Positions 5,521 through 31,496 of a stretch of 64,000 bases of DNA are shown here, piece by piece. Positions within the stretch are counted from its first letter, which is position 1. Every line of letters begins with the position of its first letter. Source of the stretch: Lepidodermella squamata (taxonomy: Eukaryota; Animalia; Gastrotricha). The notes beneath the pieces are model-generated. The model searched no databases. It worked only from the letters and a program-made list of their open reading frames with translations, and was not told the origin of the DNA. The stretch spans positions 186,001 through 250,000 of the forward strand of contig JBLDXI010000060.1 in NCBI GenBank assembly GCA_047495785.1. The letters run 5' to 3'. The translations under genes were made by a program, and so were the position numbers.

Positions 5521-7224
5521 ATGTCTGTGCCAAAAATTGTGGAAAAGGATGGCGAATTGACGACAGATCACTACAGAAAAAGGCACGCTGTTTCAGGTGA
5601 CAGGAGAGCAGATTCATACTCAGAAAAGTCGGATGTTGCTGATCAACCAGGGAAAAGAAAGCGACGGGGCGAACCTGAGGACCAGTCGCCAGCCTCCAAG
5701 AATTCCAAACTTGACGAGCCAGAGCTTTTCGTTCGAAGTAATCAAGCGAACAGAGAAGCCACTGCAAGTTCAAAGCAATCAAACATTGAAGCTGCGACTA
5801 GTCGCCAAGCAGACAGGAAGCCTTCTTCACAACCTGAAGACCAGGACTCCAAAGTGCTTTTCTTCGCAGAGCATCACTTGCAGGTCGACATTTTCGTTAC
5901 AGGCGAAGACGTCCGCGGCCGAATCAGCAACAAGAACGCAACCTACTCCGATGCTTTTCTCCAGCAGCTTCGAGATGATTTGAATGCAACGAAGTCTAAA
6001 TTGGACAAGTACTACATTGATGGTGAGCGAGAAAACCGGGCTAAATGGGCTTGGAATAAATTTCAAGGTATCTCCGATGTTTACCGCGATCTTCGATTTC
6101 GCATCCAGAAAGAATTCAACGGGCAAATTGTGACAAATGCTTGGATGAAGTACTTTGAAATCATCAGGCACTATGGGCTGATACCCTCTGATTGGCGGGT
6201 TTATGATGAAACCAGGCACAACCATCGTCATGAAGACCAGGACGATGATGGCAGGGTGTTTACAGCGTTCTTCAACGCAGAACTGCCTGGAGCAGCTGTT
6301 TGCGCTTTCAACCACTACATGAAGACGCGAGCTCGAAGACTTCCTTTCGAATGGTGGGCGTCCAGTTTAGCCCCGGATGTGGACGAGGCGAGTGAATCCC
6401 TCAATAACAACTGCCTTGGCGATCAATACGGGTTGTATGAACGCAACAAAGACCGCTGGCTTATGGAGATTGGAAATTCTCCAGCCGAGCGGAACAACGG
6501 CGATGCTACAGTCCTAAAGAACCTTCTGGATTTCGAGGCCAAAATCGGGCCACCATCTGCCGTTCGCGGGGTGGATTTCTACAGCCATGATGCCGGTATT
6601 GATGTAAGTGAGGGGCAAGAGGGCGAACTTGGCTTCAACCAGCAGGAGCTAGCAAACGCCAAGATTCATCTCGGCTGTGCTCTAGCTGGATTTCTGACGC
6701 TGAAAAAGGGCGGCACTTTCATCGCGAAACAGTACACCTTTTTCGAGACATTCACCTGGAATCTGATCTTGATCTACGCGTCCCTGTTTCGCGAGTTCAA
6801 AATCTGTAAACCGCTCACGTCCCGGCCGAGAAACAGTGAAATCTACCTCGTTGGTAAGGGATTCAAAGGCCTGCCAAATGAAGTTCGAGACGTTTTAACT
6901 GAACGGCTAGAAAACTTCACCACAGATCCATTTATTTCGGAGAAGGACGTCGAAGCCAATTTTTCGCAGCCGTTTGCCTGCATTCAGCGATTCGCAGATC
7001 GAGTTTTCCGAAAACAGCAAATTCGGTGTATCGAGTCAAACATCGCCCTATACGAGGCTAATCGCTGGGATTTGCGGGATTTGGAGCAAAAGGTCGGCGA
7101 GGTTAAGACGGAACGTGTCGATAAATGGATCAACGACTACGAAATCAAGCCTCTCGCTGATACGGAGAAAAACTGGATTCCAAGTCTACAGCAGGATAGA
7201 AAATTCGCCTACCGTAGAAAATAA
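5521..7224 (+). CDS. FtsJ/RrmJ-like RNA (cap) 2'-O-methyltransferase, asfarvirus pEP424R-like; copy A1, intact, CDS without introns
   Basis: Motifs NGQIVTNAWMK, AFFNAELPG, WWASSL, DQYGLY..N.DRWLM, NNGD, YSHDAGID, GGTFIAKQYT, KPLTSRPRNSEIYLVGK give a full K-D-K-E tetrad. Low-complexity N-terminus with GKRKRR. First ATG is at 5521. Confidence 0.88.
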   Translation: MSVPKIVEKDGELTTDHYRKRHAVSGDRRADSYSEKSDVADQPGKRKRRGEPEDQSPASKNSKLDEPELFVRSNQANREATASSKQSNIEAATSRQADRKPSSQPEDQDSKVLFFAEHHLQVDIFVTGEDVRGRISNKNATYSDAFLQQLRDDLNATKSKLDKYYIDGERENRAKWAWNKFQGISDVYRDLRFRIQKEFNGQIVTNAWMKYFEIIRHYGLIPSDWRVYDETRHNHRHEDQDDDGRVFTAFFNAELPGAAVCAFNHYMKTRARRLPFEWWASSLAPDVDEASESLNNNCLGDQYGLYERNKDRWLMEIGNSPAERNNGDATVLKNLLDFEAKIGPPSAVRGVDFYSHDAGIDVSEGQEGELGFNQQELANAKIHLGCALAGFLTLKKGGTFIAKQYTFFETFTWNLILIYASLFREFKICKPLTSRPRNSEIYLVGKGFKGLPNEVRDVLTERLENFTTDPFISEKDVEANFSQPFACIQRFADRVFRKQQIRCIESNIALYEANRWDLRDLEQKVGEVKTERVDKWINDYEIKPLADTEKNWIPSLQQDRKFAYRRK

Positions 7225-7292
7225 TCAATCGAAATAAAACCTGAGCATTAAATTACTGTTATTTGATTTAGACAATTTAATAAAGCTGAAAT

Positions 7293-8562
7293 ATGGATTT
7301 GGATATGGTTGATAATTTCGAGGAAGTCAAACTTCCTAAAATTGATGTTAGAGATATTGAGCGTTACTTGGACCTGGACACGGGTAGATACGACGAGCCT
7401 GGTTTGATGGATCTGAGAGGAGTTCTGATGCCACTTCGTGAAAGATGTTACGTCGATAACCGCGAATTCAGTCAAGAAACAGACCTGCTGCACGGCTTAA
7501 AGCCGCATATTGAGTCTCGATTCAATGGCCAAGCCGTAACAAATGGATGGTTGAAGTTCTACGAGGTCACAGGCCACTACAATCTGATTCAGCGTAGTCG
7601 GGAGGATCGCTTTATTGCTTTCCACAATGCAGCTTTGATAGGTTTTCAGTAAAATATACAGAACTCTGCACGGATTAAATGTTTCTTCTACAGGAGGTGC
7701 TTTAAGCGCTTATAACCATATGGTTAAAACTAAACCTCTGAAAGAGAGAGCAGGCTATGATTGGTATGCCTCCGACTTGATGGAGGAAACCAGACGCATG
7801 GACTGTTACAGGTTCTACCGCAGTAACGTCGGGAAATGGTTGTTTTCGAATCGAAACGACGGCGATTGTCGCAAGGTTTCCACTGTCCGAGATTTCGAAA
7901 GCCGAATCGGCCCTAAATCACAAGTAGGTGGTGTTGACCTGTGCTACCATGACTGCGCAACAAATGCCTCATCCGACCCTGAGTACGATCAGGAAAGAGT
8001 CGATGCGCAAGCTCATCTTGGATGTGCCCTGTCTGCGTTTCTAACTCTGAGAGATGGAGGGTCATTTGTAGCAGCCCAGTTCACCTACTTCCAAACGTTG
8101 ACTTGGAATTTGATCCTTATCTACGCAGCGCTTTTCGATGAATTTTACTTGTGCAAGCCAGTTGCGTCTCGCTCAAGGAATAGCGAGGTCTACTTTGTCG
8201 GAAAAGGTTACAAGAAAATGCCTAAATGGCTTGAAGACAAATTGATGTGCCGCTTGGAGAAGTTCACGTTAACGCCGATTCTAGCAAAACAGGTGTTGGA
8301 TGATAAAGGAGAAATCGGTCGCGCTATCAAGCTAATCGTCGAATTTTGCCACAAAATTTCCGGCCGACAAATGGTAGTTCTACGCCGCAATCGTGAGCTT
8401 TACGATACTAATTGCAGTGATCTTCGATCGCTGATGCGTGAGCCTGCGGAAACAAGCAAGAATCAGTGGTTAGCTAGCAACCTTGTTGCCCGTCTTGACG
8501 ATGCCAACTGGCTCCCGCCTGGTAAAATTCCCCAGCAGCGTGGTCGAAATTATCGATTTTAG
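7293..8562 (+). CDS. FtsJ-like methyltransferase paralog B1 (catalytic Lys lost), 2 exons 7293-7641 and 7694-8562
   Basis: A 52-bp GT-AG intron (7642-7693) joins ORFs 7293 and 7720 in frame (AALIG|GALSAYNHM). Motifs TNGWLK, YHDCAT, FVAAQFT (K to A), NSEVY. Confidence 0.85.
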
Positions 8563-8701
8563 ACCATGCCACACCATCTTCGCAATAAGACGCAATTTCG
8601 TGACGTCAACTAAATGATGTTATCCGATTTCGAATATAAACCGAGAATAGGCTTCTATTTCGTTCATCCCTGCTCTCTTTAAATATTTTTAGGTATCAAT
8701 T

Positions 8702-9994
8702 ATGGCTGACACCTTCAGGGAAGTGAGACTTCCGCCAATCGAACTTGAGGCTATCAGGCATTTTTTAGCTGCTGATGGCGAGCAGGATTACAATGAGCCT
8801 CAACTATTCGCCCTGCGGGCCCCGTTGATGCAAACGAGGAAGGATTTTTACATCGATAATTTCAGATTCAACGTAGTAATTGATCCCTTACATCAAGCTA
8901 GGCTCACCATCAAGCAGAATTATCGCGGTCAAAATGTGACAAATGGGTGGATGAAATTCTACGAAGTCGCGAGTCACTTCGATCTGGTGAACTGTGTTGG
9001 CAACAAGTTCCTTGCATTTCACAACGCAGCATTTCCAGGTTTGAAGTTTGAACATTGGAGCTAATTCTTGGATTTTTATCACAAAAATTGTGCACCAGGC
9101 GGAGCTTTGAGTGCTTACAACCATATGATTAAGACTGAGCCCGATCGCGAAAAGTATGAGTGGTTCGCGTCAGATATGTGGAGTCAAATCGTTGACCCTG
9201 ATGAAACAGAGCCAACAGATGAATACGGATTTTACAGAAAGAATAGAGATAAGTGGCTAATGTCAAGTTCGAACAGTGGCGACTGTAGGTTTGTCGAGAC
9301 AGTTCGCGGATTCCAAAAGGCTATTGGACCTAGGTCAGAGCATGGCGGTGTTGATTTTTGCTACCACGATGCCTCCACTAACGTTGCGGGGAATGAGGAT
9401 TATGACCACGAGACAGTAGACGCCCACGCCCATCTCGGATGCGCACTGGCTGCGTTTCTTACGCTTAAGGAGGGTGGCTCTTTCGCGGCTGCGCAGTTCA
9501 CGTGCTTCCAAACGATGACGTGGAACCTGATCCTCATTTACTCAGCCTTATTCGAAGAGTTTTATGTCTGCAAACCAGTTTCTTCTCGGTCGAAAAACAG
9601 CGAAGTTTATTTGGTTGGCAAAAAATTCAAGGGGCTTCCTCCATGGCTGGAGGACGTTTTGATGCAGCGTTTGATGCAGCCACTGAGCGACTTTTCGATG
9701 AAGCCCATATTGAAGAAAGATGTATTAGACGACAAAGATGGTTATATTGGAGAATCCATCGAGAAGATCATGGGTTTCTACTCAAACGTAGCTAAAACGC
9801 AGATTGAAGTTTTACACCGAAACCAAAAGCTTTACGAAAAGTATGAACAGGCAGGCTTAGATGCTTTGGGCCCGGATCTTCTAAATTCATTTGCAAATTT
9901 ATCGAATCAATGGATTCAGGAAAATAAGCCACGCGATTTGGCGTATTCCGATCGGCTACCTCACATCCCATTTCGCAAGCCACCAAACCACTAA
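8702..9994 (+). CDS. FtsJ-like methyltransferase paralog C1 (catalytic Lys lost), 2 exons 8702-9038 and 9099-9994
   Basis: 60-bp GT-AG intron 9039-9098 at the same codon and phase as in B; it contains an in-frame stop. Motifs TNGWMK, YHDAST, FAAAQFT, NSEVY. Confidence 0.85.
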
Positions 9995-10349: not shown

Positions 10350-10685
10350 AGCCTAACCAGTACGCCTAATGTCTAGTCGAAGGAGACGTCGATTCAAAGA
10401 AATTGAACAGTAGCAATTACTTCGTAAAAAAAATGCTAAGTCTTGTAATGGCTGTAGCATAACCTCTATAGTGGTTAATAAGCAAATTTTCCAATCGTTC
10501 CTGGTCTGTATTTGCTTTCGTCAATGCATGAAGCAAGCTGAAACCTGTAATCAGCGACATGACAAGGCTGGGAACAGCCACCGCGATTTGCTGATTGATG
10601 GGATTGCCATCTAGCACTGCGAGTATGAAAACCGAAGCTAAGAGTACTGTGTACTGATGCATTATTGGCAAGTATGGGCAAGTAC
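10350..10685 (-). pseudogene. Truncated duplicate of the 3' end (TM6-TM7 and 3'UTR) of the class C GPCR at 25730-28196
   Basis: FILAVLDGNPINQQIAVAV..LLHALTKANTDQE matches the GPCR C-terminus; UTR string gtctagtcgaagg.gacgtcgattcaaagaaattgaacagta is shared with ~25627. Confidence 0.9.
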
Positions 10686-12921: not shown

Positions 12922-14547
12922 ATGTCTGCGCCACAAATTGTGGAGAAGGACGGCGAATTGACGACTGATCACTACAGAAAAAGGCACGCCGGTTATGAGG
13001 ACAGGAGCAGAGGAGAAAAGCCCGATGCTGTTGATCAACAAGGGAAAAGAAAGCGACGGGGCGAACCTGAGGACCAGTCGCCAGCCTCCAAGAATTCCAA
13101 ACTTGACGAGCCAGAGCTTTTCGTTCGAAGTAATCAAGCGAACAGAGAAGCCAATACTACAAGTACAAAGCAATCAAACATTGAAGCTGCGACTAGTCGT
13201 CAAGCAGACAGGAAGCCACCTTCACAACCTGAAGACCAGGACTCCAAAGTGCTTTTCTTCGCAGAGCATCATTTGCAAGTCGACATTCTTGTTAAAGGCG
13301 ATGACGTCCGCGGCCGAATCAGCAACGGCAATGCAATGTACTCCGATGCTTTCCTCGAACAGATTCGTGATGGTTTGAATGCAACGAAGTCTAAATTGGA
13401 CAAGTACTACATTGATGGCAAGCGAGACAGCCAAGCCAAATCGAGTTGGAACAAATTTCAAGGTATCTCCGATGTTTACCACGATCTTCGATTTCGCATC
13501 CAGAAAGAATTCAACGGGCAAATTGTGACAAATGCTTGGATGAAGTACTTTGAGATCATCAGGCACTATGGGCTGATACCCTCTGACTGGCGGGTTTATG
13601 ATGAAACCAGGCACAACCATCGTCATGAAGACCAGGACGACGAGGGCAGAGTGTTTACAGCATTCTTCAACGCAGAACTGCCTGGAGCAGCTGTTTGCGC
13701 GTTCAACCACTACATGAAGACGCGAGCTCGAAGACTTCCTTTCGAATGGTGGGCGTCCAGTTTAGCCCCGGATGTCGACGAGGCTAGTGAATCCCTCAAT
13801 AACAACTGCCTTGGCGATCAATAAGGGTTGTATGAACGCAACAAAGACCGCTGGCTTATGGAGATTGGAAATTCTCCAGCCGAGCGGAACAACGGCGATG
13901 CTACAGTCCTAAAGAACCTTCTGGATTTCGAGGCCAAAATCGGGCCACCATCTGCCGTTCGCGGGGTGGATTTCTACAGCCATGATGCCGGTATTGATGT
14001 AAGTGAGGGGCAAGAGGGCGAACTTGGCTTCAACCAGCAGGAGCTGGCAAACGCAAAGATTCATCTCGGCTGTGCTTTGGCTGGATTTCTGACGCTGAAA
14101 AAGGGCGGCACTTTCATCGCGAAACAGTACACCTTTTTCGAGACATTCACCTGGAATCTGATCTTGATCTACGCGTCCCTGTTTCGCGAAGGCCTGCTAA
14201 ATGAAGTTCGAGACGTTTTAACTGAACGGCTAGAAAACTTCACCACAGATCCATTTATTTCGGAGAAGGACGTCGAAGCCAATTTTTCGCAGCCGTTTGC
14301 CTGCATTCAGCGATTCGCAGATCGAGTTTTCCGAAAACAGCAAATTCGGTGTATCGAGTCAAACATCGCCCTATACGAGGCTAATCGCTGGGATTTGCGG
14401 GATTTGGAGCAAAAGGTCGGCGAGGTTAAGACGGAACGTGTCGATAAATGGATCAACGACTACGAAATCAAGCCTCTCGCTGATACGGAGAAAAACTGGA
14501 TTCCATTTCTACAGAAGGATAGACAATTCGCCTACCGCAGGAGATGA
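12922..14547 (+). pseudogene. Methyltransferase copy A2
   Basis: Near-identical to A1; TAC>TAA stop at 13822-13824 and a 72-bp in-frame deletion removing KPLTSRPRNSEIYLVGK, which includes the catalytic Glu. Confidence 0.9.
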
Positions 14548-15464
14548 TGAATTTAGAATAAAACTTAAGAGTTCAATTACGGTTTGTATTTGATTTAGAC
14601 AATTTAATAAAACTTGAAGATGGATATGGATATCATGGTTGACAGTTTCGAGGAAGTCAAACTTCCAAAAATTGAGCTTAGTGATGTTGAGCGCTATCTG
14701 GATTTTGAATCTGATAATTACACTGAGCCTCGTTTGATGGATCTGATGCCACACGTGAAGAGGATTCAATGAAGCAACCGACCTTTTGCATGATTTTAAG
14801 TCAGAGATAATGTCTCGCTTTAACGGCAAAGCTGTAACAAATGGCTGGCTGAAATTCTACGAGGTCACATATCACTACAACCTGATTCAGCGTAGTCGGG
14901 AGGATGGCTTCATTGCTTTCCACAATTCAGCTCTACCAGGTTAATATGTACGCAAATATCAGAGCTCCGGAAACCTTGAATATTTCTAACAGGTGGTGCT
15001 TTAAGCGCGTACAACCATATGATAAAAAGCCGCTGCATGAGCGGGCCGGGTATGATTGGTACGCCTGAGATACGCAATGGCAAACTAGCCATTTTGATCA
15101 TTCGGGTTTCTATCGTAATAACATCGGAAAATGGTGCTACCATGACTGCGCAACCAGTGCTAAATCCGACCCTGAGTACGACCAGGATAGAGTCGATGCG
15201 CAAGCTCATCTTGGTGCCTTGCTAACCCTACGAGATGGAGGGTCATTTATAGCAGCCCAGTTTACTTATTTCCAAACGTGTTAGTGGAACCAGTGAATCC
15301 ACAATTATCTGATTGGTCGGGTGGTTTCAAGTCTGTGATTGGTTGGTTCGAAGAGCACGTGACACGCATGGTTCGAGGGGTGGGTTTAATTTTTGTCTGC
15401 GATCATGAAATATGAAATGTAGCGGAATTTGCAAAAATTACTGTTTATGGCAAAATATCGAGCA

Positions 15465-15534
15465 AGGCTCAGGGGGATCGAACCTTCAATTTTCTGCTAC
15501 CTGGGCAGACACTCTATCACTAAGCTACTTTTCC
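15465..15534 (-). pseudogene. Degenerate tRNA-like gene (AGG at the anticodon position)
   Basis: A-box TAGCTTAGTGATAGAG, stem TCTGC-CCAGGTA-GCAGA, B-box GGTTCGATCC, downstream TTTT; acceptor stem poorly paired. Confidence 0.6.
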
Positions 15535-15605
15535 TGTGGCTTAGATGGCCATTCAGTCCCAAATTTAAGCTGCCGAAGCAAACAATTCGTGGGAAAAAAC
15601 TGTTT

Positions 15606-15678
15606 TGTAAGATACGGATGCCGATCCCGTTGCCTCTCGCATGTTAAGCGAGCGCTCTACCATTTGAGCTAATGCCCC
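15606..15678 (-). pseudogene. tRNA-Ala(AGC)-derived pseudogene with anticodon changed to AAC
   Basis: GGGGCATTAGCTCAAATGGTAGAGCGCTCGC-TTAACAT-GCGAGAGG is a eukaryotic tRNA-Ala body; T-loop and acceptor 3' strand are decayed; T6 run downstream. Confidence 0.75.
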
Positions 15679-15754
15679 ATGTATTTGAGTCAATATTTAT
15701 TACTAAAGGCATTCTCAACAATAAACGTAAAACTAGCAGTAAGTTTTTGAAAAG

Positions 15755-15846
15755 TTGGCGCCCTTCGGGAGACTCGAACCCCAGAAACTGTGATTAACTG
15801 CTCACGGGAGACCAGGGTTCGATTCCCTGTCAAGAGGTAGCTTTTT
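15755..15846. pseudogene. Two divergent tRNA 3' halves (one minus strand; one Asp-like, plus strand) with their 5' halves deleted
   Basis: Minus: CTGGGGTTCGAGTCTCCCGAAGGGCGCCA then TTTT. Plus: CACGGGAGACCAGGGTTCGATTCCCTGTCAAGAG then TTTTT. Confidence 0.6.
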
Positions 15847-15893
15847 CCTCGATTTTGAAGCTGAACTATGCGTGTTGGCCAAAAATGTCCAAC

Positions 15894-15966
15894 CGCCCGA
15901 TGTGGGGCTCGAACCCACGACCCTGGGATTAAGAGTCCCATGCTCTACCGACTGAGCTAACCGGGC
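15894..15966 (-). tRNA. tRNA-Lys(CTT), intact
   Basis: GCCCGGTTAGCTCAGTCGGTAGAGCATGGGACTCTTAATCCCAGGGTCGTGGGTTCGAGCCCCACATCGGGCG: 73-nt canonical cloverleaf with a T5 terminator at 15881-15885. Confidence 0.96.
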
Positions 15967-16735
15967 TGAGACCGATCTACATTTCATATTTCCTTACTGG
16001 TATTACTTCTGGATTAAAAGCAATCGCAGAAAAAATTAAGTGGTTCGTGTCGCGTGCTCTTTGAACCAACCAATCACAGACTTGAAACCACCCGACCAAT
16101 CAGATAATTGTAGAATCACTGGTTCCACTAAGGTTGACTTGGAATTTGATCCTTGTCTACGCAGCCTTTTTTGAAGAATTTCATCTTTGCGAACCAGTTG
16201 CGTCTCGCTCGAGAAATAGCGAAATAGCGAGAAAAAGCTACAAAAAAGCTCCGAAATGGCTCGTAGAAAAATTGATGAAGTGTTGAAAGGAATAAGGCGT
16301 TTTCGTTAACACCGATTCTAGCGAAAGAAGTTTTCGATGATAATGGCAAATTGGGTCAGGCTATCAAGACGATATCGTCGACTTTAGCCGCACAATTTCC
16401 GATCGACAGATGGATTTGTTGCGGCGTAATCGAGATCTTTACGAGGAAAATCTAGGCGATCTACGGTTGCGTATGCATGAGGCTGTCGAAGTTTGCAAAC
16501 GTCAATGGTTATTTAACAATCCCGTCTTCCGCCTTGGCGATGCCGATTGGCTGCCACCTGGTAAAAATCCACAACAGCGTGGTCGAAATTATCGATCCTA
16601 GACCTTGCTTAACCACCCCCGCAATTAGACACAATTTCTTGACGTCAGCAAAATGATTTCATTTGATTTCTAATACAACTCGAAAATAGGCATGTTTCTT
16701 TAATCCCTTCCTTGTAATCTATTTAGGTATCAATT

Positions 16736-17985
16736 ATGGCTGACACCTTCAGAGAAGTGAAACTTCCAGCAATCGATCTAGAGGCTATCAGGCATTTCTT
16801 TGCTCCAGAAAACGCGGAAGATTACATTGAGCCTCAATTATTCAACAAACGGGAACCTTTGATACAAGCCAGGAGGAGGTTTTACATCGATGATTTAGAA
16901 TTCAACAAATTAGTTGATCCTCTGGAAGTAGCTAAACGTACCATTAGAGCGGTACACAAAGGTCAAAGTGTGACAAATGGTTGGATGAAATTCTACGAAG
17001 TCGCGAGTCACTACGAACTGGTGAGCTGTGCAGGCAACAAGTTCGTTGCATTTCACAACGCAGCATTTCCAGGTAAGTTTCAAAGTTGGGCCTAACTCTT
17101 GGATTCTACAGTCGACAGTTCGCATCAGGTGGAGCTTTGAGTGCGTACAATCATATGACCAAGAAAAAGCCAGATCGCGAAAATTACCACTGGTTCGCGT
17201 CGGATTTGTGGAGTCAAATTGCTGAACCTGATAAAACAGAGCCGTATACGACAAATACGGATTCTACAAAGAGAATCAAAATAAGTGGCTGATGTCAAGT
17301 AAGAACAATGGAGACTGTAGGTTAGTCGAGACTGTTCGCGGTTTCCAACAAGCTATGGGACCTGATTCAAAGAATGGCGGAGTCGATTTTTGCTACCACG
17401 ATGCTGCTACTGACGTTGCCAGTGATGGGGATGACTATGACCACGAGACAGCAGACGCCCACGCCCATCTAGGATGCGCACTGGCTGCGTTTCTTACACT
17501 CTTTTGCGGCTGCGCAGTTCACATGCTTCCAAACTCTGACGTGGAACCTTATCCTGATTTACTCGGTTTTATTCGAAGAGTTTTACATTTGTAAACCAGT
17601 CTCCTCTCGGTCGAAGAATAGTGAAGTTTATTTGATTGGAAGAAAATTCAAGGGGCTTGAAGAGTGTCCATGGCTTGAGGTCGGTTTGATGCGGCGACTG
17701 GAGCGTTTTTCGATGAAGCCTATCTTATCGGAGGATGTTTTGAACGATCATGATGGTTTTATTGGAGAAGCCATCGAGAAGATCGTGAATTTCTACACAA
17801 TCGCAGCCGAAACACAGATTGAAGTTTTACAGCAAAACCAACAGCTTTACGAAAGGTATGCACTGGCAGGCATGGAAGCTTTGGGCCCGGGTCTTCGAAA
17901 TGCCCTTGCAGATATATCGAATCAATGGCTTCACAATAATCCTGTGCACAATTTGGCGTTTTCCGATCGTTTACCGCATACCTAA
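16736..17985 (+). pseudogene. Methyltransferase copy C2 (frameshifted)
   Basis: Homologous to C1 with intron 17073-17128; frame breaks near 17245 and 17500 (LKEGG deleted). Confidence 0.85.
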
Positions 17986-18232
17986 TTTCACAATCCATCG
18001 AACCACTGAGACACGTTAATTCATGACAAATTGGATAAAACTAGTCGCTTTTATTCCAATCTAAAAAAGTGAAATCAATTCGCTGAGTGAACCATCTCGC
18101 TAAGTGAGCCATCGCTAAGTGAAAAAGTATTAATCACACAGTGATGTAAAACATGTTATTGCTAGCAAATGACGCCAAAATAAACTACCATATTTTCACT
18201 GATCTTTGATTAAATGAATCACTAGCCACAGA

Positions 18233-21694: not shown

Positions 21695-23400
21695 ATGTCT
21701 GCGGATGAAGTGCCAAAAATTGTTGAGAATGATGGCGAATTGACAACGGATCACTACAGAAAAAGTCAAGCTGGTTTAGAGGACAGGAGACCAGATTCGT
21801 ACGCAGAAAAGCCCGAAGCTGCTAATCAACAAGTGAAAAGAAAGCCATGGGGTGAAGCCGAGGATCAGTCTTCAGCCTCTAAGTATTCCAAGCTTGGCGA
21901 GGCCGAGTCTTTCGTTCAAAATGATCTTCGAGCGAACATAAGACGACAGTCAAATTCCAAAGAATCAAACCTTGAAGCTGCGACTAGCCGTCAAGCGGAC
22001 ATGAAGCGACCCGAATACCAGGACTCCAAAGTGCTTTTCTTCGCAGAGCATCACTTGCAGGTCGACATTTTCGTTACAGGCGATGACGTCCGCGGCCGGA
22101 TCAGCAAAAAAACGCAACGTACTCCGATGCTTCTCTGCAACAGCTTCGCGATGATTTGAATGCAACGAAGTCTAAATTGGACAAGTACTACATTGATGGT
22201 GAGCGAGACAACCGGGCTAAATGGGCTTGGAATAAATTTCAAGGTATCTCCGATGTTTACCACGATCTTCGATTTCGCATCCAGAAAGAATTCAACGGGC
22301 AAATTGTGACAAATGCTTGGATGAAGTACTTTGAAATCATCAGGCACTATGGGCTGATACCCTCTGACTGGCGGGTTTATGATGAAACCAGGCACAACCA
22401 TCGTCATGAAGACCAGGACGACGAGGGCAGAGTGTTTACAGCATTCTTCAACGCAGAACTGCCTGGAGCAGCTGTTTGCGCGTTCAACCACTACATGAAG
22501 ACGCGAGCTCGAAGACTTCCTTTCGAATGGTGGGCGTCCAGTTTAGCCCCGGATGTCGACGAGGCTAGTGAATCCCTCAATAACAACTGCCTTGGCGATC
22601 AATAAGGGTTGTATGAACGCAACAAAGACCGCTGGCTTATGGAGATTGGAAATTCTCCAGCCGAGCGGAACAACGGCGATGCTACAGTCCTAAAGAACCT
22701 TCTGGATTTCGAGGCCAAAATCGGGCCACCATCTGCCGTTCGCGGGGTGGATTTCTACAGCCATGATGCCGGTATTGATGTAAGTGAGGGGCAAGAGGGC
22801 GAACTTGGCTTCAACCAGCAGGAGCTGGCAAACGCAAAGATTCATCTCGGCTGTGCTTTGGCTGGATTTCTGACGCTGAAAAAGGGCGGCACTTTCATCG
22901 CGAAACAGTACACCTTTTTCGAGACATTCACCTGGAATCTGATCTTGATCTACGCGTCCCTGTTTCGCGAGTTCAAAATCTGTAAACCGCTCACGTCCCG
23001 GCCGAGAAACAGTGAAATTTATCTCGTTGGTAAGGGATTCAAAGGCCTGCCAAATGAAGTTCGAGACGTTTTAACTGAACGGCTGGAAAACTTCACCACA
23101 GATCCATTTATTTCGGAGAAGGACGTCGAAGCCAATTTTTCGTAGCCGTTCGCCTGCATCCAGCGATTCGCAGAGCGTGTGTTTCGGAAACAGCAAATTC
23201 GGTGTATCGAGTCGAACATCGCATTGTACGAAGCTAGTCGCTGGGATTTGCGGGATTTGGAGCAAAAGGTCGGCGAAGTTAAGACGGAACGTCTAGATAA
23301 ATGGATCAGCGACTACGAAATCAAGCCTCTGGCTGACACGGAGAAAACTGGATTCCATTTCTACAGAAGGATAGAAAATACGCCTACCGTGAAAAATGAT
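21695..23400 (+). pseudogene. Methyltransferase copy A3
   Basis: Frameshift in an A-run near 22110, the same TAA as A2 (22603-22605), an extra TAG at 23143-23145 and a further frameshift near the end. Confidence 0.9.
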
Positions 23401-23469: not shown

Positions 23470-23996
23470 ATGGATTTGGATATGGTTGATGGAGGATGGT
23501 TTTATTGCTTTCCACAATTCAGCTTTGATAGGTTTTTCAGTAAATTATACAGAAATCTGAAGAGAATATCTGCACAGCGCTTTTCGACGAATTTTACCTT
23601 TGCAAGCCAGCTGCGTCTCACTCGAGGAATAGGTAGGTCTACTTCGTAGGAAAAGGTTACAGGAAAATCGATTGAAGAAAAATTGATGTGCCGCTTGGAG
23701 AAGTTCACGTTAACGCCGATTCTAGCAAAACAGGTTTTGGATCGATGATAAGGGGGAAATTGGTCAGGCTATCAATCTGATCGCCCAATTTTGCACAAGA
23801 TTTCCGGTCGACAAATGTTAGTTTACGACGTTATCAAGAGCTTTACGATGCTAATCGCAGCGATTTTTGATCGTTAGTACATGAGCCTGCGGAAACAGGC
23901 AAGACTCAGCTAGCAATCCTCTTAGCAGTCTTGACGATGCCGCTTGGCTGACGCCTGGTAAAACGCCCTAACAGCGTGGTCGAAACTATCGATTTG
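23470..23996 (+). pseudogene. Methyltransferase copy B3, heavily deleted relic
   Basis: Retains atggatttggatatggttgat, the intron donor region and the C-terminal cagcgtggtcgaaa; large internal deletions. Confidence 0.85.
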
Positions 23997-24102
23997 ACCA
24001 TCCTACCAATAAGATACGATTTCTTGATCTGAGCGAAACGAATTCATTTTATTTCACTTATAAACTATTCCTTTCTGTATCTCATTTTAGGTGGTATCAA
24101 TA

Positions 24103-25415
24103 ATGACAGATATTTTTAGGAAAGTGAAACTAACAAAAATCGATCTTGGGGCTTTAGAGAATGTTTTAGCTCAAGATAAATCGGAAGATTACGATGAGCC
24201 AAAACTATTGAAACTGAAGGAATCGTTGTTTCAAGCGATGAGGGATTGTTACATCAATGATCAAAAATTTACACAATCAACTGATCCCTTGTTTAAAGCT
24301 ATCCCGGAAATAGTGCATCAGTACAATGGTCAATGTGTAACGAATGGCTGGCTGAAATTCTACGAAGTCGCGAGTCACTTCAAACTGGTTAATTGCACAA
24401 GCGACAAGTTTATAGCATTTCACAACGCTGCTTTTCCAGGTTAGTTGGAACATGGGACCTGAATCTACGATTCTACTATGAAAATTTCTGATCAGGCGGG
24501 GCTTTGAGTGCGTACAATCACATGATTAAGACTAAGCCCGATCCTGACAAGTATGACTGGTTTGCGTCAGATTTATGGGAGAAAATCGTCGATCCTAGTA
24601 AATACGACAAAGATGAGCCGAAAGATGATTATGGATTCTACAGAGGCAATCAATCCAAGTGGCTGATGTCACGCAAGAACAGTGGAGACTGTACGTTAGT
24701 CGAGACTGTTCGCGGATTCAAAAAAGCTATTGGGCCTGGTTCAACGCATGGCGGTGTTGATTTTTGCTATCACGATGCCGCTACCTACGTTGGCAATGAC
24801 GAGGATCATGACCATGAAAAAGCAGAAGCGCATGCCCACCTAGGATGCGCACTGGCTGCGTTTCTTACGCTCAAGAAGGGTGGCTCTTTTGTGGCTGCGC
24901 AGTTCACATGCTTCCAAACACTGACGTGGAACCTGATTCTAATCTACTCTGCCTTATTCGAAGAGTTTTATCTCTGCAAGCCAGTATCTTCTCGTTCGAA
25001 AAACAGTGAGGTTTTTTTGATTGGAAAACATTTCAAGGGGCTTGAAGACTGTCAATGGCTTGAGAATGCTTTGATGGGGCGGCTGGAACAATTTTCTATG
25101 AAACCAATCTTATCGAAGAACGTTTTAGAGGATCAGGGTCGCTTTATCGAATCGATAAACCAGATCGTGGGTTTCTACACTGAAGCAGCCGAAAACCAGA
25201 TTGCAGTTTTACACCGAAACAAACAGCTTTACAATATTTTTGCACCGACACTCTGTGTGGGCGAGGAGCTTGAAAATGAACTGATTAATACAAGGAAACG
25301 CTGGTTTCAAAGCAATACGATAACCTATTTGGGAAAGCATGTTTGGTTGCCAAACAGCGATAAACGAAACCTCCAATCTAGTAAAAAGCCTGAATATTCA
25401 GGGAAAGTCTTATGA
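24103..25415 (+). CDS. FtsJ-like methyltransferase paralog C3, intact, 2 exons 24103-24439 and 24496-25415
   Basis: A 56-bp intron (24440-24495) joins the two ORFs in frame (AAFPG|GALSAYNHM); FVAAQFT (K to A). Confidence 0.85.
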
Positions 25416-25729: not shown

Positions 25730-28196
25730 TTAATTAGCTGATGTCGCAGATGGTTCTTGGTCTGTATTTGCTTTTGTCAATGCGTGAAGCAAGATGAAAC
25801 CTGAAATCATCGACATAACAAGGCTGAGAACCGCCACTGCGATTTGCTGATTGATAGGATTTCCATCCAGCACGGCGAGTATAAAAATCGCAGCCAAGAG
25901 AACTGTTGCATTATTAGCAAGTACAAGAGAAAAATGCTGAAATCGTTTCGCGCTTTTGATTGTTCGTAGCTTGAATGCCGCTATGCTGCCAATGAGAAGG
26001 ACGAGAATAAGCCCGACCGCCAAAGCAATAATCCATCCTGTATGGTTCGAATCCGAGAGGCATCTTAGTTCGAAATATTGCTCCACTATATCAGTGCTTT
26101 CATCGTAAAAAGGCTCTGAAATCGAGATGTTGTCACATTTCCAGCCGCCTGATACAAGAAACCAGACAGTCAATATGTAGGTGAATGCCAGAAGACAAAT
26201 CACTGTCACCTTGGAGGCGGTTCTCGGAACCGTTTCGAATGAAATGACCTTAGTAGCCGCTTTCGTTCCTGGGGGATCTAGCATGTTGAGTTTCGTGCCG
26301 ACTATAGCCGTATTAGCACGAGTCTCCATTGTTGTCAGTGAAACATCAGAGGTTAAAGTTCCAGCTGATCGGTTCGGTTTCCCTTTCTTCCCCTTCATTG
26401 ATTGGTAGAAAGCTGAAAAGAGGCAAGTTGAAGGGACGCAGCATATTAAAGCAAGCCCGTAAACTAAGGTTACAGCCCTTGAAACTTCGATACCATAGAC
26501 GCTCGATTCATTGGTCTCACAAGTGAACAGTACCGCGGCTGCATTCAAAAGAAGGCAACCGAAAAAGCCGAGACACGCTAGTCCAGGCGTTCTAGGTTGA
26601 AATTTCGCTGCATTTCTCCTCATCGAAGCGTATGCCAATCCGACAAGCCAGCATACACCGGTTAAACCCGAGATGAATGTAACTGCGACGAAAGCTGAGA
26701 ATGGAACTTGAATCTCAGTTTTGACATACAAGCGTCGATCTCGGGGAGGCATGCCATCCGGACCGTTCCAGTTGACTAATCCGAGATTAACAACGCGATA
26801 ACTCTCATACGAATTAACAGGCGAGTTTTCCAAGAAAGTGAAGGCAAAAGCTCGACGTAAGCCAATTCCAGGCGTCCAATACATCAAAAAGTTACTGGAA
26901 CTGATCAAATCACCCTCCGAGTCGTATTTCATCCTGGCAGAATGCAGACCCTTGAAATCAACGGCGATCGCTTCTTTCAGCAACGCTTTGCTAACAACTT
27001 GTCGGTTCAATGCGAAATCACGTAGGGTTAGGTTATTTTCAGCTTTCAGCCGACGTTCGGCTCTATCCAGAATCAACGTTGCGTGAATTACGGCGTCGTG
27101 GCAAAGATATCGCCGCTCGTAATCAATCGCATTCGGCGTTCCATTTTTGAATTTCGCGAACATTACGTCGTATTCCGGCTGGTTGTAGCCGAACTCGCTC
27201 TTCTGAAGTGGCATGATATTGTCGTCAAAACCAACTGCGAATTCGAGTGATCGATTTAGTTGCTCCGTCAGAATGGATCGGCTGCAGTAGCTGGGGATAG
27301 AAGCATTCGGGTAGGTCAATGGGTTAGGCATTGCCGAGTCTGGAATTATGAAAGTGTACCTCGGACCTCTAATTCCAGCTCGGTAACACTCGCAGTACAA
27401 AGTGACCGTATCGGTGTGATTAGTGACGTAAGCAACTATGTAGCGAACATCGCTTTCTTTCAGCGATTGAGCTTTATCGGCGTTGAAACTTTCAATGGCA
27501 TCGAACCAAGTCACGTCCACGCCTTGATCGATAGCGATCTGTTGCAGATGCATGGCAGATACAATGTCTTTCACGTTTTGGGTGTAGGTGAACAGGGCGA
27601 ATCGGCGGGCGTTGAAAGTCTGTTTGATGAGTCTCACCATAGCGTAGTTCCTAGGCCGATTTGTTGGCATTGAGATGAACAAGTTGGTATAGATTTTTCG
27701 ATTATTCAGAGATGCTGAAACCAAAAAGATAATCCAAGAACCACGAGTGGCTATTTGTGAACTTACGAGACGTGCAAGCTGTGGCGATGTTGATGTAGTC
27801 CAGATGTTTAAGGAATCTACCGATTGCCTCACATCCGTTTGAAACCCACAAACCAATCGCAACAGGGGACTGGTATTTGTTTTGTTGTGCTAGGTCTGCA
27901 GCATTTACTTCCCAGAAATTTGTGAAATTCAAGAAAGATCGAACTGCATTCACAGCATTGACACGCTCATCTACCTCATCGATTTGAATGTTGTAGTCCG
28001 GTAAAACGTCTGTTCGAGAGTTCATTAGGGAGGCCGTGAATTGTGCACTCGCCCTGCAATCTTGGAGGATAAATGGCTCATTGCCTGTTATTCGAGTTGT
28101 GTGATGAAGCACAATGGTATATGGTTTCAGCCAGACTGGAGTTATCAGAAGCGACAAAATTCCGAGGAAAAACATTTTTCTCGAAAATGTGGACAT
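25730..28196 (-). CDS. Class C GPCR, GABA-B-receptor-like (Venus flytrap/ANF domain + 7TM), ~804 aa, 2 exons
   Basis: Signal peptide; R.DVLPDYNI; intron 27715-27766 gives ACTSPSLNNRKIY; seven hydrophobic segments with GABA-B-like P....GC and W.....G...AFKLR; no cysteine-rich domain. Confidence 0.85.
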
Positions 28197-29201: not shown

Positions 29202-31496
29202 TCAATCTTCAAGGTGCATAGCTCCAGCCCCCAACAATAGCTCGATGCATCTCTGCTTATCATCAGGCGCCACATCAGTCTTGCAGTTCGTTGCTGCGGA
29301 TAAAGCCGTCCATCCGTTTGACAGCATTCGGGCGTTCACGTTTATACCACGTGAGTTTAATAAGAAATCTAAAACATGGGAGTGACCGTTATACGCAGCG
29401 ATCATTAACGGCGTAACACCATCATTCCTCGCGGCATTCACATCGGCGTTGAAGTCTCCAGCGAGAATCTTCACGATTTCCAATTGACCATTCTGAGCTG
29501 CGAAGTGTAACGGTGTAGCACCATTATTCCTCGCTGCATTCACATCGGCGTTGAAGTCCCCAGCGAGAATCTTCACGATTTCCAATTGACCATTCTGAGC
29601 TGCGAAGTGTAACGGTGTAGCACCATTATTCCTCGCTGCATTCACATCGGCGTTGAAGTCTCCAGCGAGAAGCTTCACGATTTCCAATTCGCCACTCTGA
29701 GCAGCTATATACAACGGTGTGGCACCATCATGTTTTGCTGCATTCACATCGGCGTTGAAGTCTCCAGCGAGAAGCTTAACGATTTCGAAATGACCATTCT
29801 GAGCAGCGATCCACAGTGGCGTCGCCCCGTTATTCGCCACTGCATCGACATTCGCACTCAAATTTGTCGCAAGCACTTGCACGACTTTGATGTACCCATT
29901 TTTAGCAGCCAAGTAAACTGCAGTTCTGCCTTGGTCATCCACCAAGTCAACGTTGGCTCCATACTTTTCCACTAATGGTTTCATAAATTCATCCATTCCC
30001 TCTTGTGCTGCAATCATCAGTGGCGTGAAGCTGTCGTCGTTCCGACTGTTCACGTCCAAATTCAATCGCTTATCCTCCAGCAATTTCTCAATTTCGGGCA
30101 ACATTCTTCGTTGCCTCGAGTATTTAAATAGCAGCTGTCAGTGATAAAAGCAGTTAGAATTTTAGAATGTGTACCGCAACAAATCATCGACGTTAAAGCT
30201 CACCTTCAACGCCGCTTCAGAATCTATTACAGTGCTGCTATCGTTTGTTGGAGTGGATGTATTTCCTCTTTCAGCATGTTGGTTAGGCGTCAAAAAGGAG
30301 CTTGCTAGCAAGTCATTCATGGTAGCTCGTCTTGATTTATCTTTTCGTAGCATAGATAGCACGAAGTTACGGAACTCTTGAGAAAATCTGAGATGGTCGA
30401 ATTTCGGCTGGGCTGATTCCCTGAATACGGGAGAGACATATCAATTATTGATTATATTTCTTCGAATTCAATTATATTTCTTGCTCGGAGTGCAGCAGAC
30501 ATTGAGAAGCAGCGCAAAGTCTTGAAACTCACTGATTTATATCTCGAATCGTTTCGAACTGCGTAAGAATTATGATATGTTGAACGCCGAGAGCCATATT
30601 ACATATAATTATTACACACAGGTAGGCGAAAATGAGCCAATTCGAACAGCGTGACACCGAGAGACCACCAATCACTGGCTGGTGAATGCTGCTCATTGTG
30701 AAAAATCTCTGGCGCGGCGTAAATCGGCGTTCCGAGTCCTAAGGTTGTACTGTTGGACGTTCTGGAAACGAAAAGTTAAAGCGGTCATCGCTGGCGCATT
30801 GTGAGAAGTTTTACCCATCATAGATTTTTGCAAATCCGAAATCGCCCAACTTGACAGTTTTCCCATCGTCACATAGGAATATGTTTTTTGGCTTGATATC
30901 CCGATGGAGTGCCCTATTTTCGTGCAAGCAGTGTATGGCCGATACTAATTGTTGAGCCCAGTGCCGTAGTAATTGTTCTTCAACAGTACCGTTGTTTTGT
31001 TTGGTTCGTTTAATGTAGTCTTCCAAATCTCCGCCAGGACAAAACTCCATGACTAGGTAGTACATATGATCACCCAGGTGCCATGGTTTGTTCTTGCTCT
31101 GGTTTGTATCATCAATTTCGAACAACAGTTCTGGATTTAAAAGTATTTTTTTAAATAATGCTTCCAGTCTTCATCTGACCTTCAAACGCGCCATGAACAG
31201 CGACAATGTAAGGGTGATTAAGATTTTGCAGCTTGACATGCTGGATGGAATAATCAACAATTTCAATTAGAAAATTAATTTTATCATGCCAAATCGACCT
31301 CATTGCGGGCCAATTCGACTAATTTCCTAGCCATATCTTGTTCATAGCTCCGTCCAATCGTGCTGAGATTGACCACTTTCACAGCGTAGGGCGCAACATC
31401 ATTGTTGACATTGCAGTGCCAAACCGATCCAAAGGCGCCGCTACCTAATTTTTTTATTTTGTTGAACTCAGAGAATGATTGAAACCTCTGCAGCAT
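29202..31496 (-). CDS. Multi-exon Ser/Thr kinase (NEK-like) fused to C-terminal ankyrin repeats
   Basis: [15 protein letters not shown]|[43 protein letters not shown]. The splice AAG|gtgagc...gacag|CTG joins the kinase tail in frame to the ankyrin ORF. Confidence 0.85.
29410..29830. repeat. Near-identical 102-bp (34-aa) coding tandem repeats in the ankyrin array
   Basis: gcattcacatcggcgttgaagtc recurs every 102 bp, four times. Confidence 0.9.

What the first reader, a model, noticed from the sequence alone, without database searches (positions are those of the whole stretch)
7293..9994. One active enzyme travelling with two conserved pseudo-enzymes
Seen: A keeps K-D-K-E (AWMK, SHDAG, IAKQY, NSEI). 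B1, C1 and C3 all replace the second Lys (FVAAQFT/FAAAQFT) and the Glu of the SAM-binding loop (NAELPG to NAALIG/NAAFPG), yet remain full-length despite deep B-versus-C divergence. Established: that Lys is the catalytic base of RrmJ-fold 2'-O-methyltransferases. Inference: B and C are under selection for a non-catalytic role, such as cap/RNA binding, acting as regulatory subunits of A, or serving as decoys or sensors for viral RNA or viral MTase partners.
Basis: partly seen in the sequence, partly recalled or inferred. Interest (0 to 1): 0.85.

Follow-up and report, generated by a model that had tools for sequence, protein, structure and literature searches.

The report
Virus-derived cap methyltransferase with dead paralogs
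A eukaryotic genome carries an intact RNA-cap methylating enzyme gene of giant-virus (African-swine-fever-virus-like) type, followed at 68 and 139 bases by two sister genes that have lost the catalytic lysine yet are still kept by natural selection, so they probably do a non-enzymatic job.

Summary
A1 (5521-7224) keeps K-D-K-E. B1 (7293-8562), C1 (8702-9994) and C3 (24103-25415) are intact one-intron genes with Ala in place of the second Lys and of the loop Glu.

The family is the asfarvirus-type cap 2'-O-methyltransferase; the best solved relative is ASFV EP424R (E 7e-45). Of the 250 database relatives collected, only two fragments lack that Lys. The nearest relatives checked lie in giant-virus gene contexts, whereas this window is cellular, with 52-60 nt introns.

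All eight B/C copies and remnants carry the Lys-to-Ala change, so it predates the triplication. Since then B/C evolved at omega about 0.23, and omega = 1 is rejected (2 delta lnL 188). They keep 41-45 of 58 family-conserved positions. The losses common to all three sit mostly at SAM-contact and catalytic-motif residues.

A second, unidentified intron-bearing eukaryote in ENA metagenomes has an A-type gene (52% identical to A1) and two paralogous fragments with the same AAQFTC signature.

Selection on catalytically dead paralogs is therefore well supported. Their role is inferred, most likely cap/RNA binding together with A.

Caveats: the loop Glu varies in active relatives, five of the nine copies are broken, and expression is untested.

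The parts
5521..7224 (+). A1: intact single-exon gene, 567 aa. It has a low-complexity N-terminal extension of about 140 aa containing a basic KRKRR cluster, followed by an EP424R-type cap 2'-O-methyltransferase domain with K210, E254, D357, K403 and E440.
7225..7292 (+). A1-B1 spacer of 68 nt. AATAAA lies about 10 nt after the A1 stop, and a T-rich tract ending in AG lies about 20 nt before the B1 ATG. The spacer is conserved in unit 2.
7293..7641 (+). B1 exon 1. It carries the first tetrad Lys (GWLKFYEV) and NAALIG; the Ala replacing the loop Glu is at 7632-7634.
7642..7693 (+). B1 intron, 52 nt, GT..AG, phase 1, inside the Gly codon of the P/I-G-G loop.
7694..8562 (+). B1 exon 2. It has CYHD (Asp kept), FVAAQFT (Ala codon 8074-8076 in place of the catalytic Lys) and NSEV (Glu kept).
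8563..8701 (+). B1-C1 spacer of 139 nt. A pyrimidine-rich tract ending in TTTTAG lies 9 nt before the C1 ATG, and the same motif precedes C2 and C3.
8702..9038 (+). C1 exon 1 (GWMKFYEV, NAAFPG; Ala at 9029-9031).
9039..9098 (+). C1 intron, 60 nt, GT..AG, at the same position and phase as in B1.
9099..9994 (+). C1 exon 2 (CYHD, FAAAQFT with the Ala codon at 9491-9493, NSEV). Its best solved relative is EP424R, E 1e-21, with this Ala aligned to K268.
12922..14547 (+). A2: broken copy. It has an in-frame stop at 13825-13827 (aligned to A1 codon 303) and lacks 24 codons that include the catalytic Glu motif. A 300-nt stretch is 100% identical to A1.
14620..16595 (+). B2: eroded copy with stops, frameshifts, deletions and about 840 nt of foreign sequence (15291-16133) carrying tRNA-Lys. 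It still reads NSALPG and FIAAQFT.
16736..18006 (+). C2: eroded copy with frameshifts and stops. It still reads NAAFPG and FAAAQFT.
21710..23396 (+). A3: broken copy with two frameshifts, the same stop as A2 and one further stop. Its methyltransferase part is 97.6% identical to A1.
23476..23995 (+). B3: C-terminal fragment, heavily eroded.
24103..25415 (+). C3: intact, 418 aa. Exon 1 is 24103-24439, the 56-nt intron is 24440-24495 and exon 2 is 24496-25415. It has NAAFPG and FVAAQFT.

Best explanation
**Shown**
- A, B and C belong to the asfarvirus/EP424R family of mRNA cap-1 (ribose 2'-O) methyltransferases.
- A-type is fully canonical and carries an added N-terminal tail with a basic, NLS-like cluster.
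- B and C carry Ala at the catalytic Lys (EP424R K268) and have remodelled the SAM/active pocket: E132 to A, S160 to D, plus changes in the YSHDAG and AKQY motifs.
- They keep the fold-defining residues, the other three tetrad residues, and most of the residues that contact SAM in EP424R.
- They have been under purifying selection ever since (omega about 0.2-0.45).

**Inferred history**
- The family entered a eukaryotic lineage from a giant virus.
- B and C are host-side duplicates of the A-type gene.

**Inferred mechanism**
- B and C are non-catalytic proteins that bind capped RNA and probably also SAM or SAH.
- They are co-expressed with A from a very compact, operon-like cluster.
- They act with A as targeting or regulatory partners, like the dead-paralog ('prozyme') subunits of other methyltransferases. 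A performs the 2'-O-methylation.
For: **Family**
- A1 matches EP424R at E 7e-45 and C1 at E 1e-21, with the B/C Ala aligned to K268.
- Pfam FtsJ is hit by A1, B1 and C1.

**Viral kinship**
- The best homologs are 53-56% identical.
- Three of the close homologs, including the top hit, sit in dense intron-less contigs with D5-type primase-helicase, ribonucleotide reductase and SET genes. Pacmanvirus proteins are among the hits.

**Host status of the locus**
- B and C have GT..AG introns and the neighbouring genes are cellular.

**Single origin of A, B and C**
- A tree that holds A1, P0002, B1, C1 and C3 together is as good as the free tree (lnL 1.13 higher, p-AU 0.52).

**Dead but constrained**
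- All B/C copies, broken ones included, carry the Ala.
- Omega is 0.23 for B1/C1/C3, with lnL -3744.6 against -3838.7 at omega = 1. For five pseudo-type sequences omega is 0.22.
- Pairwise C1-C3 omega is 0.38-0.45, bootstrap interval 0.28-0.52.
- B/C keep 41-45 of 58 positions that are at least 95% conserved in the family.
- K268A strongly lowers EP424R activity (PMC13059714).

**Deep retention**
- P0124 and P0125 (ENA) share K-to-A, Y-to-F, F-to-C and E-to-Q in the string GGSFVAAQFTCHQT.
- They group with B/C (91 SH-aLRT).
- They co-occur with an A-type gene in the same samples.
- They are paralogs of each other: dS is 0.2, while the A-type genes of the same two samples differ by dS of 0.01 or less.

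**Link to A**
- The spacers are 68 and 139 nt, with a poly(A) signal and acceptor-like motifs.
- In the second organism a methyltransferase-like gene lies head-to-head about 1.1 kb from the A-type gene.
Against: - EP424R is a monomer in solution and active on its own, so A need not have a partner.
- C3 stays intact although A3 and B3 next to it are dead, so tight cis-linkage to an A copy is not required.
- B and C lack A's N-terminal basic tail and might sit in another compartment.
- Omega near 0.4 between C copies is fairly high. Comparisons with the broken copies also give omega below 1, so part of the signal is historical.
- There is no expression, binding or interaction evidence.
- The adjacent gene fragment in the second organism cannot be typed as pseudo or active.
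- The grouping of the pseudo-type sequences could be helped by long-branch attraction.
- The organism is unidentified.
Confidence: 0.45

Rival explanations
1. B and C act independently of A as antiviral decoys or sensors. As dead copies of a viral cap enzyme they bind cap-0 viral transcripts, or components of the viral capping machinery, and block cap-1 formation or mark the RNA.
For: - The family is viral and the active relatives found in context are giant-virus genes.
- B/C evolve faster than A-type: omega is 0.23-0.45 against 0.15-0.17 for A-type in the second organism.
- Copy number turns over, with three units and five broken copies.
- B/C lack A's nuclear-type tail.
- C3 survives without a neighbouring A copy.
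Against: - Positive selection could not be tested with so few sequences.
- No virus of this host is known.
- The tight, conserved spacing to A suggests co-expression with A.
- No cap-binding data exist.
Confidence: 0.2
2. B and C are still enzymes. They would have a compensating basic residue, a different catalytic mechanism, or a new methyl acceptor.
For: - Three of the four tetrad residues and most SAM contacts are kept (N130, G135, G136, D201 and D228 equivalents).
- S160 to D introduces the acidic residue that binds the SAM ribose in many Rossmann methyltransferases, which is my own knowledge.
- The loop Glu is dispensable in active relatives.
Against: - The second Lys is invariant in every other database relative whose fragment covers that position.
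- Its Ala mutant is strongly impaired in EP424R.
- No new basic residue conserved across B1, C1 and C3 was seen at family-conserved positions.
- Several neighbouring pocket residues changed together.
Confidence: 0.12
3. B1, C1 and C3 are redundant duplicates on their way to decay, like B2, B3 and C2. The omega below 1 is a legacy of earlier constraint.
For: - Five of the nine copies are already broken.
- Comparisons with broken copies also give omega of 0.22-0.63.
- Expression is unknown.
Against: - There are three intact reading frames of 405-418 codons with conserved intron position and splice sites, at dS of 0.6 or more between copies.
- The Lys loss predates the triplication, and probably the split from a second eukaryote that also keeps at least two copies.
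- The losses common to all three copies sit mostly at SAM-contact and catalytic-motif positions rather than being scattered.
Confidence: 0.08

Closest known systems
African swine fever virus EP424R cap 2'-O-methyltransferase (PDB 9IQ4, 9W69, 9W7F; PMC13059714) and its relatives in Pacmanvirus and asfarvirus-like metagenomic genomes
   Same: - Same protein family and length class (about 400-430 aa). A1 matches at E 7e-45.
- A1 has every residue of the K111-D228-K268-E305 tetrad and the N-x-E-L-P-G loop.
   Different: - The genes here are in a cellular genome. B and C have spliceosomal introns and A has an extra N-terminal tail.
- B and C have Ala at K268 and E132 and Asp at S160. No viral member examined has that.
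Vaccinia VP39 (own knowledge; also cited in PMC13059714)
   Same: It is a cap 2'-O-methyltransferase that also has a non-catalytic job, as the poly(A) polymerase processivity subunit. This shows that the fold can serve as an RNA-binding accessory factor.
   Different: In VP39 one protein does both jobs. It has only remote sequence similarity to EP424R. No poly(A) polymerase partner was identified in this window: ORF 46315-47484 has only a sub-threshold hit to the PolyA_pol head domain.
Dead-paralog partners of methyltransferases: METTL14 with METTL3, Trm6 with Trm61, Dnmt3L with Dnmt3a, and the trypanosome PRMT1 prozyme (own knowledge; the prozyme concept also appears in PMC6221367)
   Same: A duplicate that lost catalytic residues is retained under selection alongside an active paralog.
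   Different: Those partners are shown to form complexes, whereas here interaction is untested. The parent enzyme is a monomer that works alone. The origin is viral, and there are two distinct dead paralogs (B and C).
Human CMTR1 and CMTR2 (PDB 4N48; own knowledge for the inactive second methyltransferase-like domain of CMTR2)
   Same: RrmJ-fold cap methyltransferases. CMTR1 is the next-best solved relative (E 1.6e-12). CMTR2 combines an active and a degenerate methyltransferase-like module.
   Different: It is a different subfamily. In CMTR2 the dead module is fused in one chain, whereas here the dead modules are separate genes.
Endogenous giant-virus elements and co-opted viral genes in eukaryotes (for example PMC10640383, PMC12455990, PMC7017919, listed)
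   Same: A gene whose relatives are in Nucleocytoviricota resides in a cellular genome.
   Different: There is no block of viral hallmark genes in this window. Only this one family is present, it is amplified, and it carries introns and signs of selection rather than erosion alone.

Membership tests
RrmJ/FtsJ-fold methyltransferases (Pfam PF01728) | Significant match to the family profile above the curated cut-off | tested here: met
   A1 scores 42.1 bits, B1 exon 2 scores 44.3 and C1 exon 2 scores 46.2, against a cut-off of 24.1.
EP424R-type (asfarvirus-like) cap 2'-O-methyltransferases | Full-length sequence homology to EP424R and its giant-virus relatives | tested here: met
   A1 matches at E 7e-45 and C1 exon 2 at E 1e-21 against PDB 9IQ4. 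There are 191 homologs at E of 1e-5 or better; the best, at 56% identity, is one of three checked that lie in giant-virus gene contexts.
EP424R-type (asfarvirus-like) cap 2'-O-methyltransferases | Catalytic K-D-K-E tetrad | tested here: not met
   This is met by A1 (K210, D357, K403, E440). It is not met by B1, C1 and C3, which have K-D-A-E. B and C are therefore homologs but not functional members.
EP424R-type (asfarvirus-like) cap 2'-O-methyltransferases | SAM-contact residues of the crystal structure (N130, E132, L133, G135, G136, S160, L161, D201, V202, D228) | tested here: inconclusive
   - A1 keeps N130, E132, L133, G135, S160, L161, D201 and D228; it has Ala at G136 and V202.
- B and C keep N130, G135, G136, D201 and D228.
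- B and C changed E132 to A, S160 to D and V202 to C.
- Whether B and C still bind SAM cannot be decided from sequence.
EP424R-type (asfarvirus-like) cap 2'-O-methyltransferases | Cap-0 to cap-1 methyl transfer activity | not testable with these tools
   This needs an enzyme assay.
Pseudoenzyme ('prozyme'-like) partner of an active paralog | Loss of a residue essential for catalysis | tested here: met
   Lys to Ala in all eight B/C copies and remnants. K268A impairs EP424R.
Pseudoenzyme ('prozyme'-like) partner of an active paralog | Purifying selection after the loss | tested here: met
   Omega is 0.22-0.23, with omega = 1 rejected at 2 delta lnL of 188 and 160. Pairwise omega is 0.36-0.49.
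Pseudoenzyme ('prozyme'-like) partner of an active paralog | Co-occurrence with the active paralog across lineages | tested here: met
   This holds in the window and in a second eukaryote in the ENA samples ERZ27332993 and ERZ27333047. That is only two lineages.
Pseudoenzyme ('prozyme'-like) partner of an active paralog | Physical complex with, and effect on, the active paralog | not testable with these tools
   No multimer prediction is on offer. The spliced B and C proteins have no reference, so they could not be handed to the structure tool.
Giant endogenous viral element | Cluster of several viral hallmark genes in the host region | tested here: not met
   The other ORFs in the window are class C GPCR-like, Cys-loop-like, ankyrin, EGF and CD225-like. 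Only the larger ORFs were scanned.

The most novel reading that the evidence does not exclude
A eukaryote captured a giant-virus cap-1 methyltransferase and turned it into a three-gene, operon-like module. Two catalytically dead copies would serve as virus-derived immune proteins that bind under-methylated (cap-0) viral mRNA, or the viral capping enzyme itself. This would be a self/non-self cap surveillance system built from the virus's own enzyme.
Probability: 0.15. Interest if true: 0.85.

Novelty: new variant of a known kind. Interest (0 to 1): 0.62.

Why it matters
Catalytically dead paralogs that partner active methyltransferases are known for m6A, m1A, DNA and arginine methylation. I know of none for mRNA cap 2'-O-methylation encoded as separate genes, and the literature searches here found none.

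In this case the whole module appears to derive from an asfarvirus-like giant virus and to have been kept in at least two eukaryotic lineages. If B and C modulate or redirect A, that would be a new way of regulating cap-1 formation. If they act as decoys, it would be a new kind of virus-derived defence.

Either way the system is directly testable with three small proteins that have a solved homolog.

Tried and rejected
**Identifying the organism (all failed)**
- An exact look-up of A1 found nothing on record.
- A homolog search with the 710-aa GPCR-like ORF gave no hit at 1e-10.
- Rfam found only tRNAs.
- A paper search for the ENA and BioSample accessions found nothing.
- The window does not look human: it has 52-60 nt introns, and neither A1 nor the GPCR-like ORF, the two window proteins looked for in the protein collection, is on record there. 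Nothing was withheld on that ground.

**Looking for more pseudo-type genes**
- The word-based search with C1 found only about 40%-identical active types plus the two ENA fragments.
- A profile search of 1.84 billion representatives gave a best score of 233 bits, which is the viral type.
- A scan of JGI metagenome contigs with the patterns F[VA]AAQFT[CY] and QT[LM][TS]WNLI found nothing.
- The IMG/VR scan gave two loci, both of the active AKQYT type.

**Other dead ends**
- ORF 46315-47484 has a weak PolyA_pol hit but no solved relative, so the idea of a VP39-like link to a poly(A) polymerase was dropped.
- Isoelectric points of A, B and C were uninformative.
- Using the broken copies as neutral controls for dN/dS did not work. 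They also give omega below 1, probably because decay is recent and the alignments come from protein-guided segments.

**Not run**
- Structure prediction of B and C, because the spliced proteins have no reference and long sequences may not be typed in.

**Handling of broken copies**
- They were only compared.
Full report
**1. What is in the sequence**

Positions 5.5-25.4 kb hold three tandem units of three related genes (tblastn of the unit-1 proteins against the window; repeat families; unit-against-unit blastn).

Unit 1 is complete.
- A1 runs from 5521 to 7224. It is a single exon of 567 aa from the first ATG.
- B1 is 7293-7641 plus 7694-8562, 405 aa.
- C1 is 8702-9038 plus 9099-9994, 410 aa.

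B1 and C1 each have one short GT..AG intron (52 and 60 nt). The intron sits in the same place and phase, inside the Gly codon that follows the P/I-G of the SAM loop. C3 (24103-24439 plus 24496-25415, 418 aa) has the same structure with a 56-nt intron. A1 has no intron there.

The other copies are broken.
- A2 has an in-frame stop at 13825-13827 and lacks 24 codons that include the catalytic Glu motif.
- A3 has the same stop, a second stop and two frameshifts.
- B2 is interrupted by about 840 nt carrying a tRNA-Lys gene and has stops and deletions.
- C2 has frameshifts and stops.
- B3 is a fragment.

The rest of the window looks cellular.
- Two class-C-GPCR-like ORFs that are 59% identical to each other.
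- A Cys-loop-receptor-like ORF.
- Ankyrin and EGF ORFs.

I do not take it for human.

**2.

A1 has AWMK, NAELPG, SHDAG, IAKQY and NSEI. B1 has NAALIG and FVAAQFT. C1 has NAAFPG and FAAAQFT. C3 has NAAFPG and FVAAQFT. All three keep the first Lys, the Asp and the Glu of the tetrad.

In an alignment with the 120 best database homologs, the tetrad and the loop Glu are invariant except in B and C. Of the 250 database relatives aligned to a family profile, the second Lys is missing only in two ENA fragments.

There is one correction. The loop Glu is A, S, D, C or G in 20 more distant relatives that have an intact tetrad. On its own that change says little.

**3. What family this is**

The best solved relative of A1 is the African swine fever virus protein EP424R (PDB 9IQ4, 9W69, 9W7F; E 7e-45). 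Human CMTR1 is far behind at 1.6e-12. C1 exon 2 gives the same ranking, with its Ala aligned to EP424R K268.

EP424R was recently shown to be the viral cap-1 2'-O-methyltransferase (PMC13059714).
- Its tetrad is K111-D228-K268-E305.
- Each single Ala mutant is strongly impaired.
- SAM contacts include N130, L133, G135, G136, F137, S160, L161, D201, V202 and D228, and E132 contacts sinefungin.
- The protein is a monomer in solution.

Mapped onto that structure by alignment, B and C keep N130, G135, G136, D201 and D228. They have changed E132 to A, S160 to D, V202 to C and K268 to A.

Of 58 columns that are at least 95% conserved in the 120 homologs, A1 keeps all 58. B1 keeps 41, and C1 and C3 keep 45 each. 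Most of the changes shared by B1, C1 and C3 fall at residues that contact SAM in EP424R or inside the conserved motifs around the catalytic residues (the NAELPG loop, ASSL, YSHDAG, AKQY). This pattern of an intact fold with a remodelled pocket is what one expects of a pseudoenzyme.

**4. Origin**

The closest homologs of A1 are only 53-56% identical. The three I looked up (P0001, P0003, P0039) lie in dense, intron-less contigs. These carry a D5-type primase-helicase, ribonucleotide reductase subunits, and SET or kinase genes in conserved order. Those are giant-virus contexts. Pacmanvirus proteins are among the named hits.

A1 has one close sister, P0002 (52% identity, 99 SH-aLRT). It comes from a 3-kb ENA metagenome contig on which it is the only called gene.

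B and C form a long-branched clade (stem 2.1 substitutions per site). The tree that holds A1, P0002, B1, C1 and C3 together is as good as the free tree (lnL 1.13 higher, p-AU 0.52).

The simplest history is one capture of a viral gene, then duplication in the host lineage, with fast change on the branch where the Lys was lost. The root is not inferred. The direction of transfer, virus to host, is my inference from the distribution of the family.

**5. Selection**

All B and C copies, including the eroded B2 and C2, have the Ala at the Lys position and at the loop position. The losses therefore predate the triplication of the unit.

- Between the C copies dS is 0.6-0.7 and between B1 and B2 it is about 0.9-1.0.
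- Pairwise C1-C3 gives dN 0.27, dS 0.63-0.71 and omega 0.38-0.45, with a bootstrap interval of 0.28-0.52.
- B against C is saturated at synonymous sites, with dN 0.40.
- A codon model (GY+F3X4) on B1, C1 and C3 (389 codons) gives omega 0.23, with lnL -3744.6 against -3838.7 when omega is fixed at 1.
- With the two ENA fragments added (190 codons), omega is 0.22, with lnL -2649.7 against -2729.5.

A caveat applies. Comparisons with the broken copies also give omega of 0.22-0.63. The decay of those copies is therefore recent, or the protein-guided alignments bias the estimate. Omega below 1 does not prove that each intact copy is constrained today.

The A copies are much more alike (dS 0.09-0.17) and share a 300-nt stretch of 100% identity. 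That points to gene conversion among A copies.

**6. A second lineage**

P0124 (contig L005, ENA ERZ27332993) and P0125 (L006, ERZ27333047) are C-terminal halves of the same family. They read GGSFVAAQFTCHQT, which shares four derived states with B and C: K to A, Y to F, F to C and E to Q. They group with B and C at 91 SH-aLRT, although long branches are in play.

L005 has a 53-nt GT..AG intron at a different position, so this organism is also a eukaryote with very short introns. The same two samples hold the A-type gene (P0002 on L004, P0251 on L008).

The two A-type genes are 99.6% identical (dS 0.01 or less), while P0124 and P0125 are 86% identical (dS 0.2, omega 0.36-0.49). The latter are therefore paralogs within one species. 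That species thus also has one A-type gene and at least two pseudo-type genes.

A-type omega between L004 or L008 and L007 is 0.15-0.17.

On L007 a further methyltransferase-like gene starts about 1.1 kb upstream of the A-type gene on the other strand and runs off the contig. Only its first 105 residues are seen, so it cannot be typed.

No pseudo-type gene was found in JGI metagenome contigs, in IMG/VR, or among 1.84 billion representative proteins.

**7. How it most likely works**

*Shown.* A is a canonical member of a family whose solved member makes cap-1. B and C are homologs that lack the catalytic Lys and are under purifying selection.

*Inferred.* B and C do not methylate. They keep the RNA groove and probably a SAM or SAH site. 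They work with A.

The link to A rests on three observations.
- The very short spacers (68 and 139 nt). AATAAA lies just after the A stop, and conserved pyrimidine-rich tracts ending in AG lie just before the B and C start codons. This layout recalls trans-spliced operons.
- Co-retention of A-type and pseudo-type genes in two lineages.
- Known precedents of dead-paralog partners.

Against this:
- EP424R works as a monomer.
- C3 survives beside dead A3 and B3.
- Only A has the N-terminal tail with a KRKRR cluster.

The main rival is an A-independent role as a decoy or sensor for viral capped RNA. That fits the viral ancestry, the faster evolution and the copy-number turnover. Residual or altered catalysis and slow decay are less likely.

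**8. Novelty**

Dead methyltransferase paralogs are a known kind. What appears to be new is a set of separate dead paralogs of a cap 2'-O-methyltransferase, in a module of giant-virus ancestry kept in cellular genomes. Two literature searches found nothing comparable. I rate it a new variant of a known kind.

**9. Limits**

- The organism is unknown.
- There are no expression data.
- The spliced B and C proteins could not be folded, because they have no reference.
- The second lineage is known only from short contigs.

Noticed in passing
window 15291-16133 (tRNA-Lys CTT at 15894-15966 minus strand; weak tRNA-like match at 15606-15678 minus strand): About 840 nt with no match to B1 interrupts the B2 remnant. 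It carries one good tRNA-Lys gene and a second, degenerate tRNA-like sequence. This may be a tRNA gene pair or a tRNA-derived mobile element.
   Followed up: partly
window 6866-7165 and 14189-14488; A regions of all three units: - The 3' ends of A1 and A2 share 300 nt at 100% identity.
- A copies differ by dS 0.09-0.17, while B and C copies of the same units differ by dS 0.6-1.0.
- A2 and A3 share the same premature stop.
- Together this suggests ongoing gene conversion among A copies, including between the intact and the broken ones.
   Followed up: partly
window 7225-7292, 8563-8701, 14548-14619, 16650-16735, 24040-24102: The spacers are operon-like. AATAAA lies about 10 nt after the A stop. 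Conserved T-rich tracts ending in AG (TGATTTAG before B; TTTTAG or TATTTAG before C) lie 9-21 nt upstream of the start codons. This could reflect trans-splicing of a polycistronic transcript.
   Followed up: partly
window 25730-27862 (minus), 41320-43326 (minus), 10417-10671 (minus): Two single-exon class-C-GPCR-like ORFs are 59% identical to each other. They have no database relative at E 1e-10. An 84-aa ORF after C1 matches the last transmembrane region of the first one over 51 aa at 88% identity, so the duplicated unit took a piece of the neighbouring receptor gene with it.
   Followed up: partly
window 29383-29892 and 54585-56508: Ankyrin-repeat ORFs are built from 102-nt and 99-nt tandem units at 60-92% identity.
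   Followed up: no
window 58771-59437, 60140-61080, 63237-63803 (minus-strand ORFs): There are three tandem copies of a small gene family at 68-83% nucleotide identity. One ORF has a weak CD225/IFITM-like hit (E 0.004, below the cut-off).
   Followed up: no
L001 and L003 (both from NCBI assembly GCA_013565735.1) and L002 (Logan SRR23814900): Three different contigs share the gene order primase-helicase, two unknown genes, FtsJ-like methyltransferase, and in two of them ribonucleotide reductase. One very fragmented assembly therefore holds at least two distinct asfarvirus-like genomes.
   Followed up: no
L007 1-315 (minus strand): In the second eukaryote a methyltransferase-like gene lies head-to-head with the A-type gene and is cut by the contig end. 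Its N-terminus has a B/C-like layout and the string NSWLKFYEI. Its catalytic Lys region is not on the contig.
   Followed up: partly
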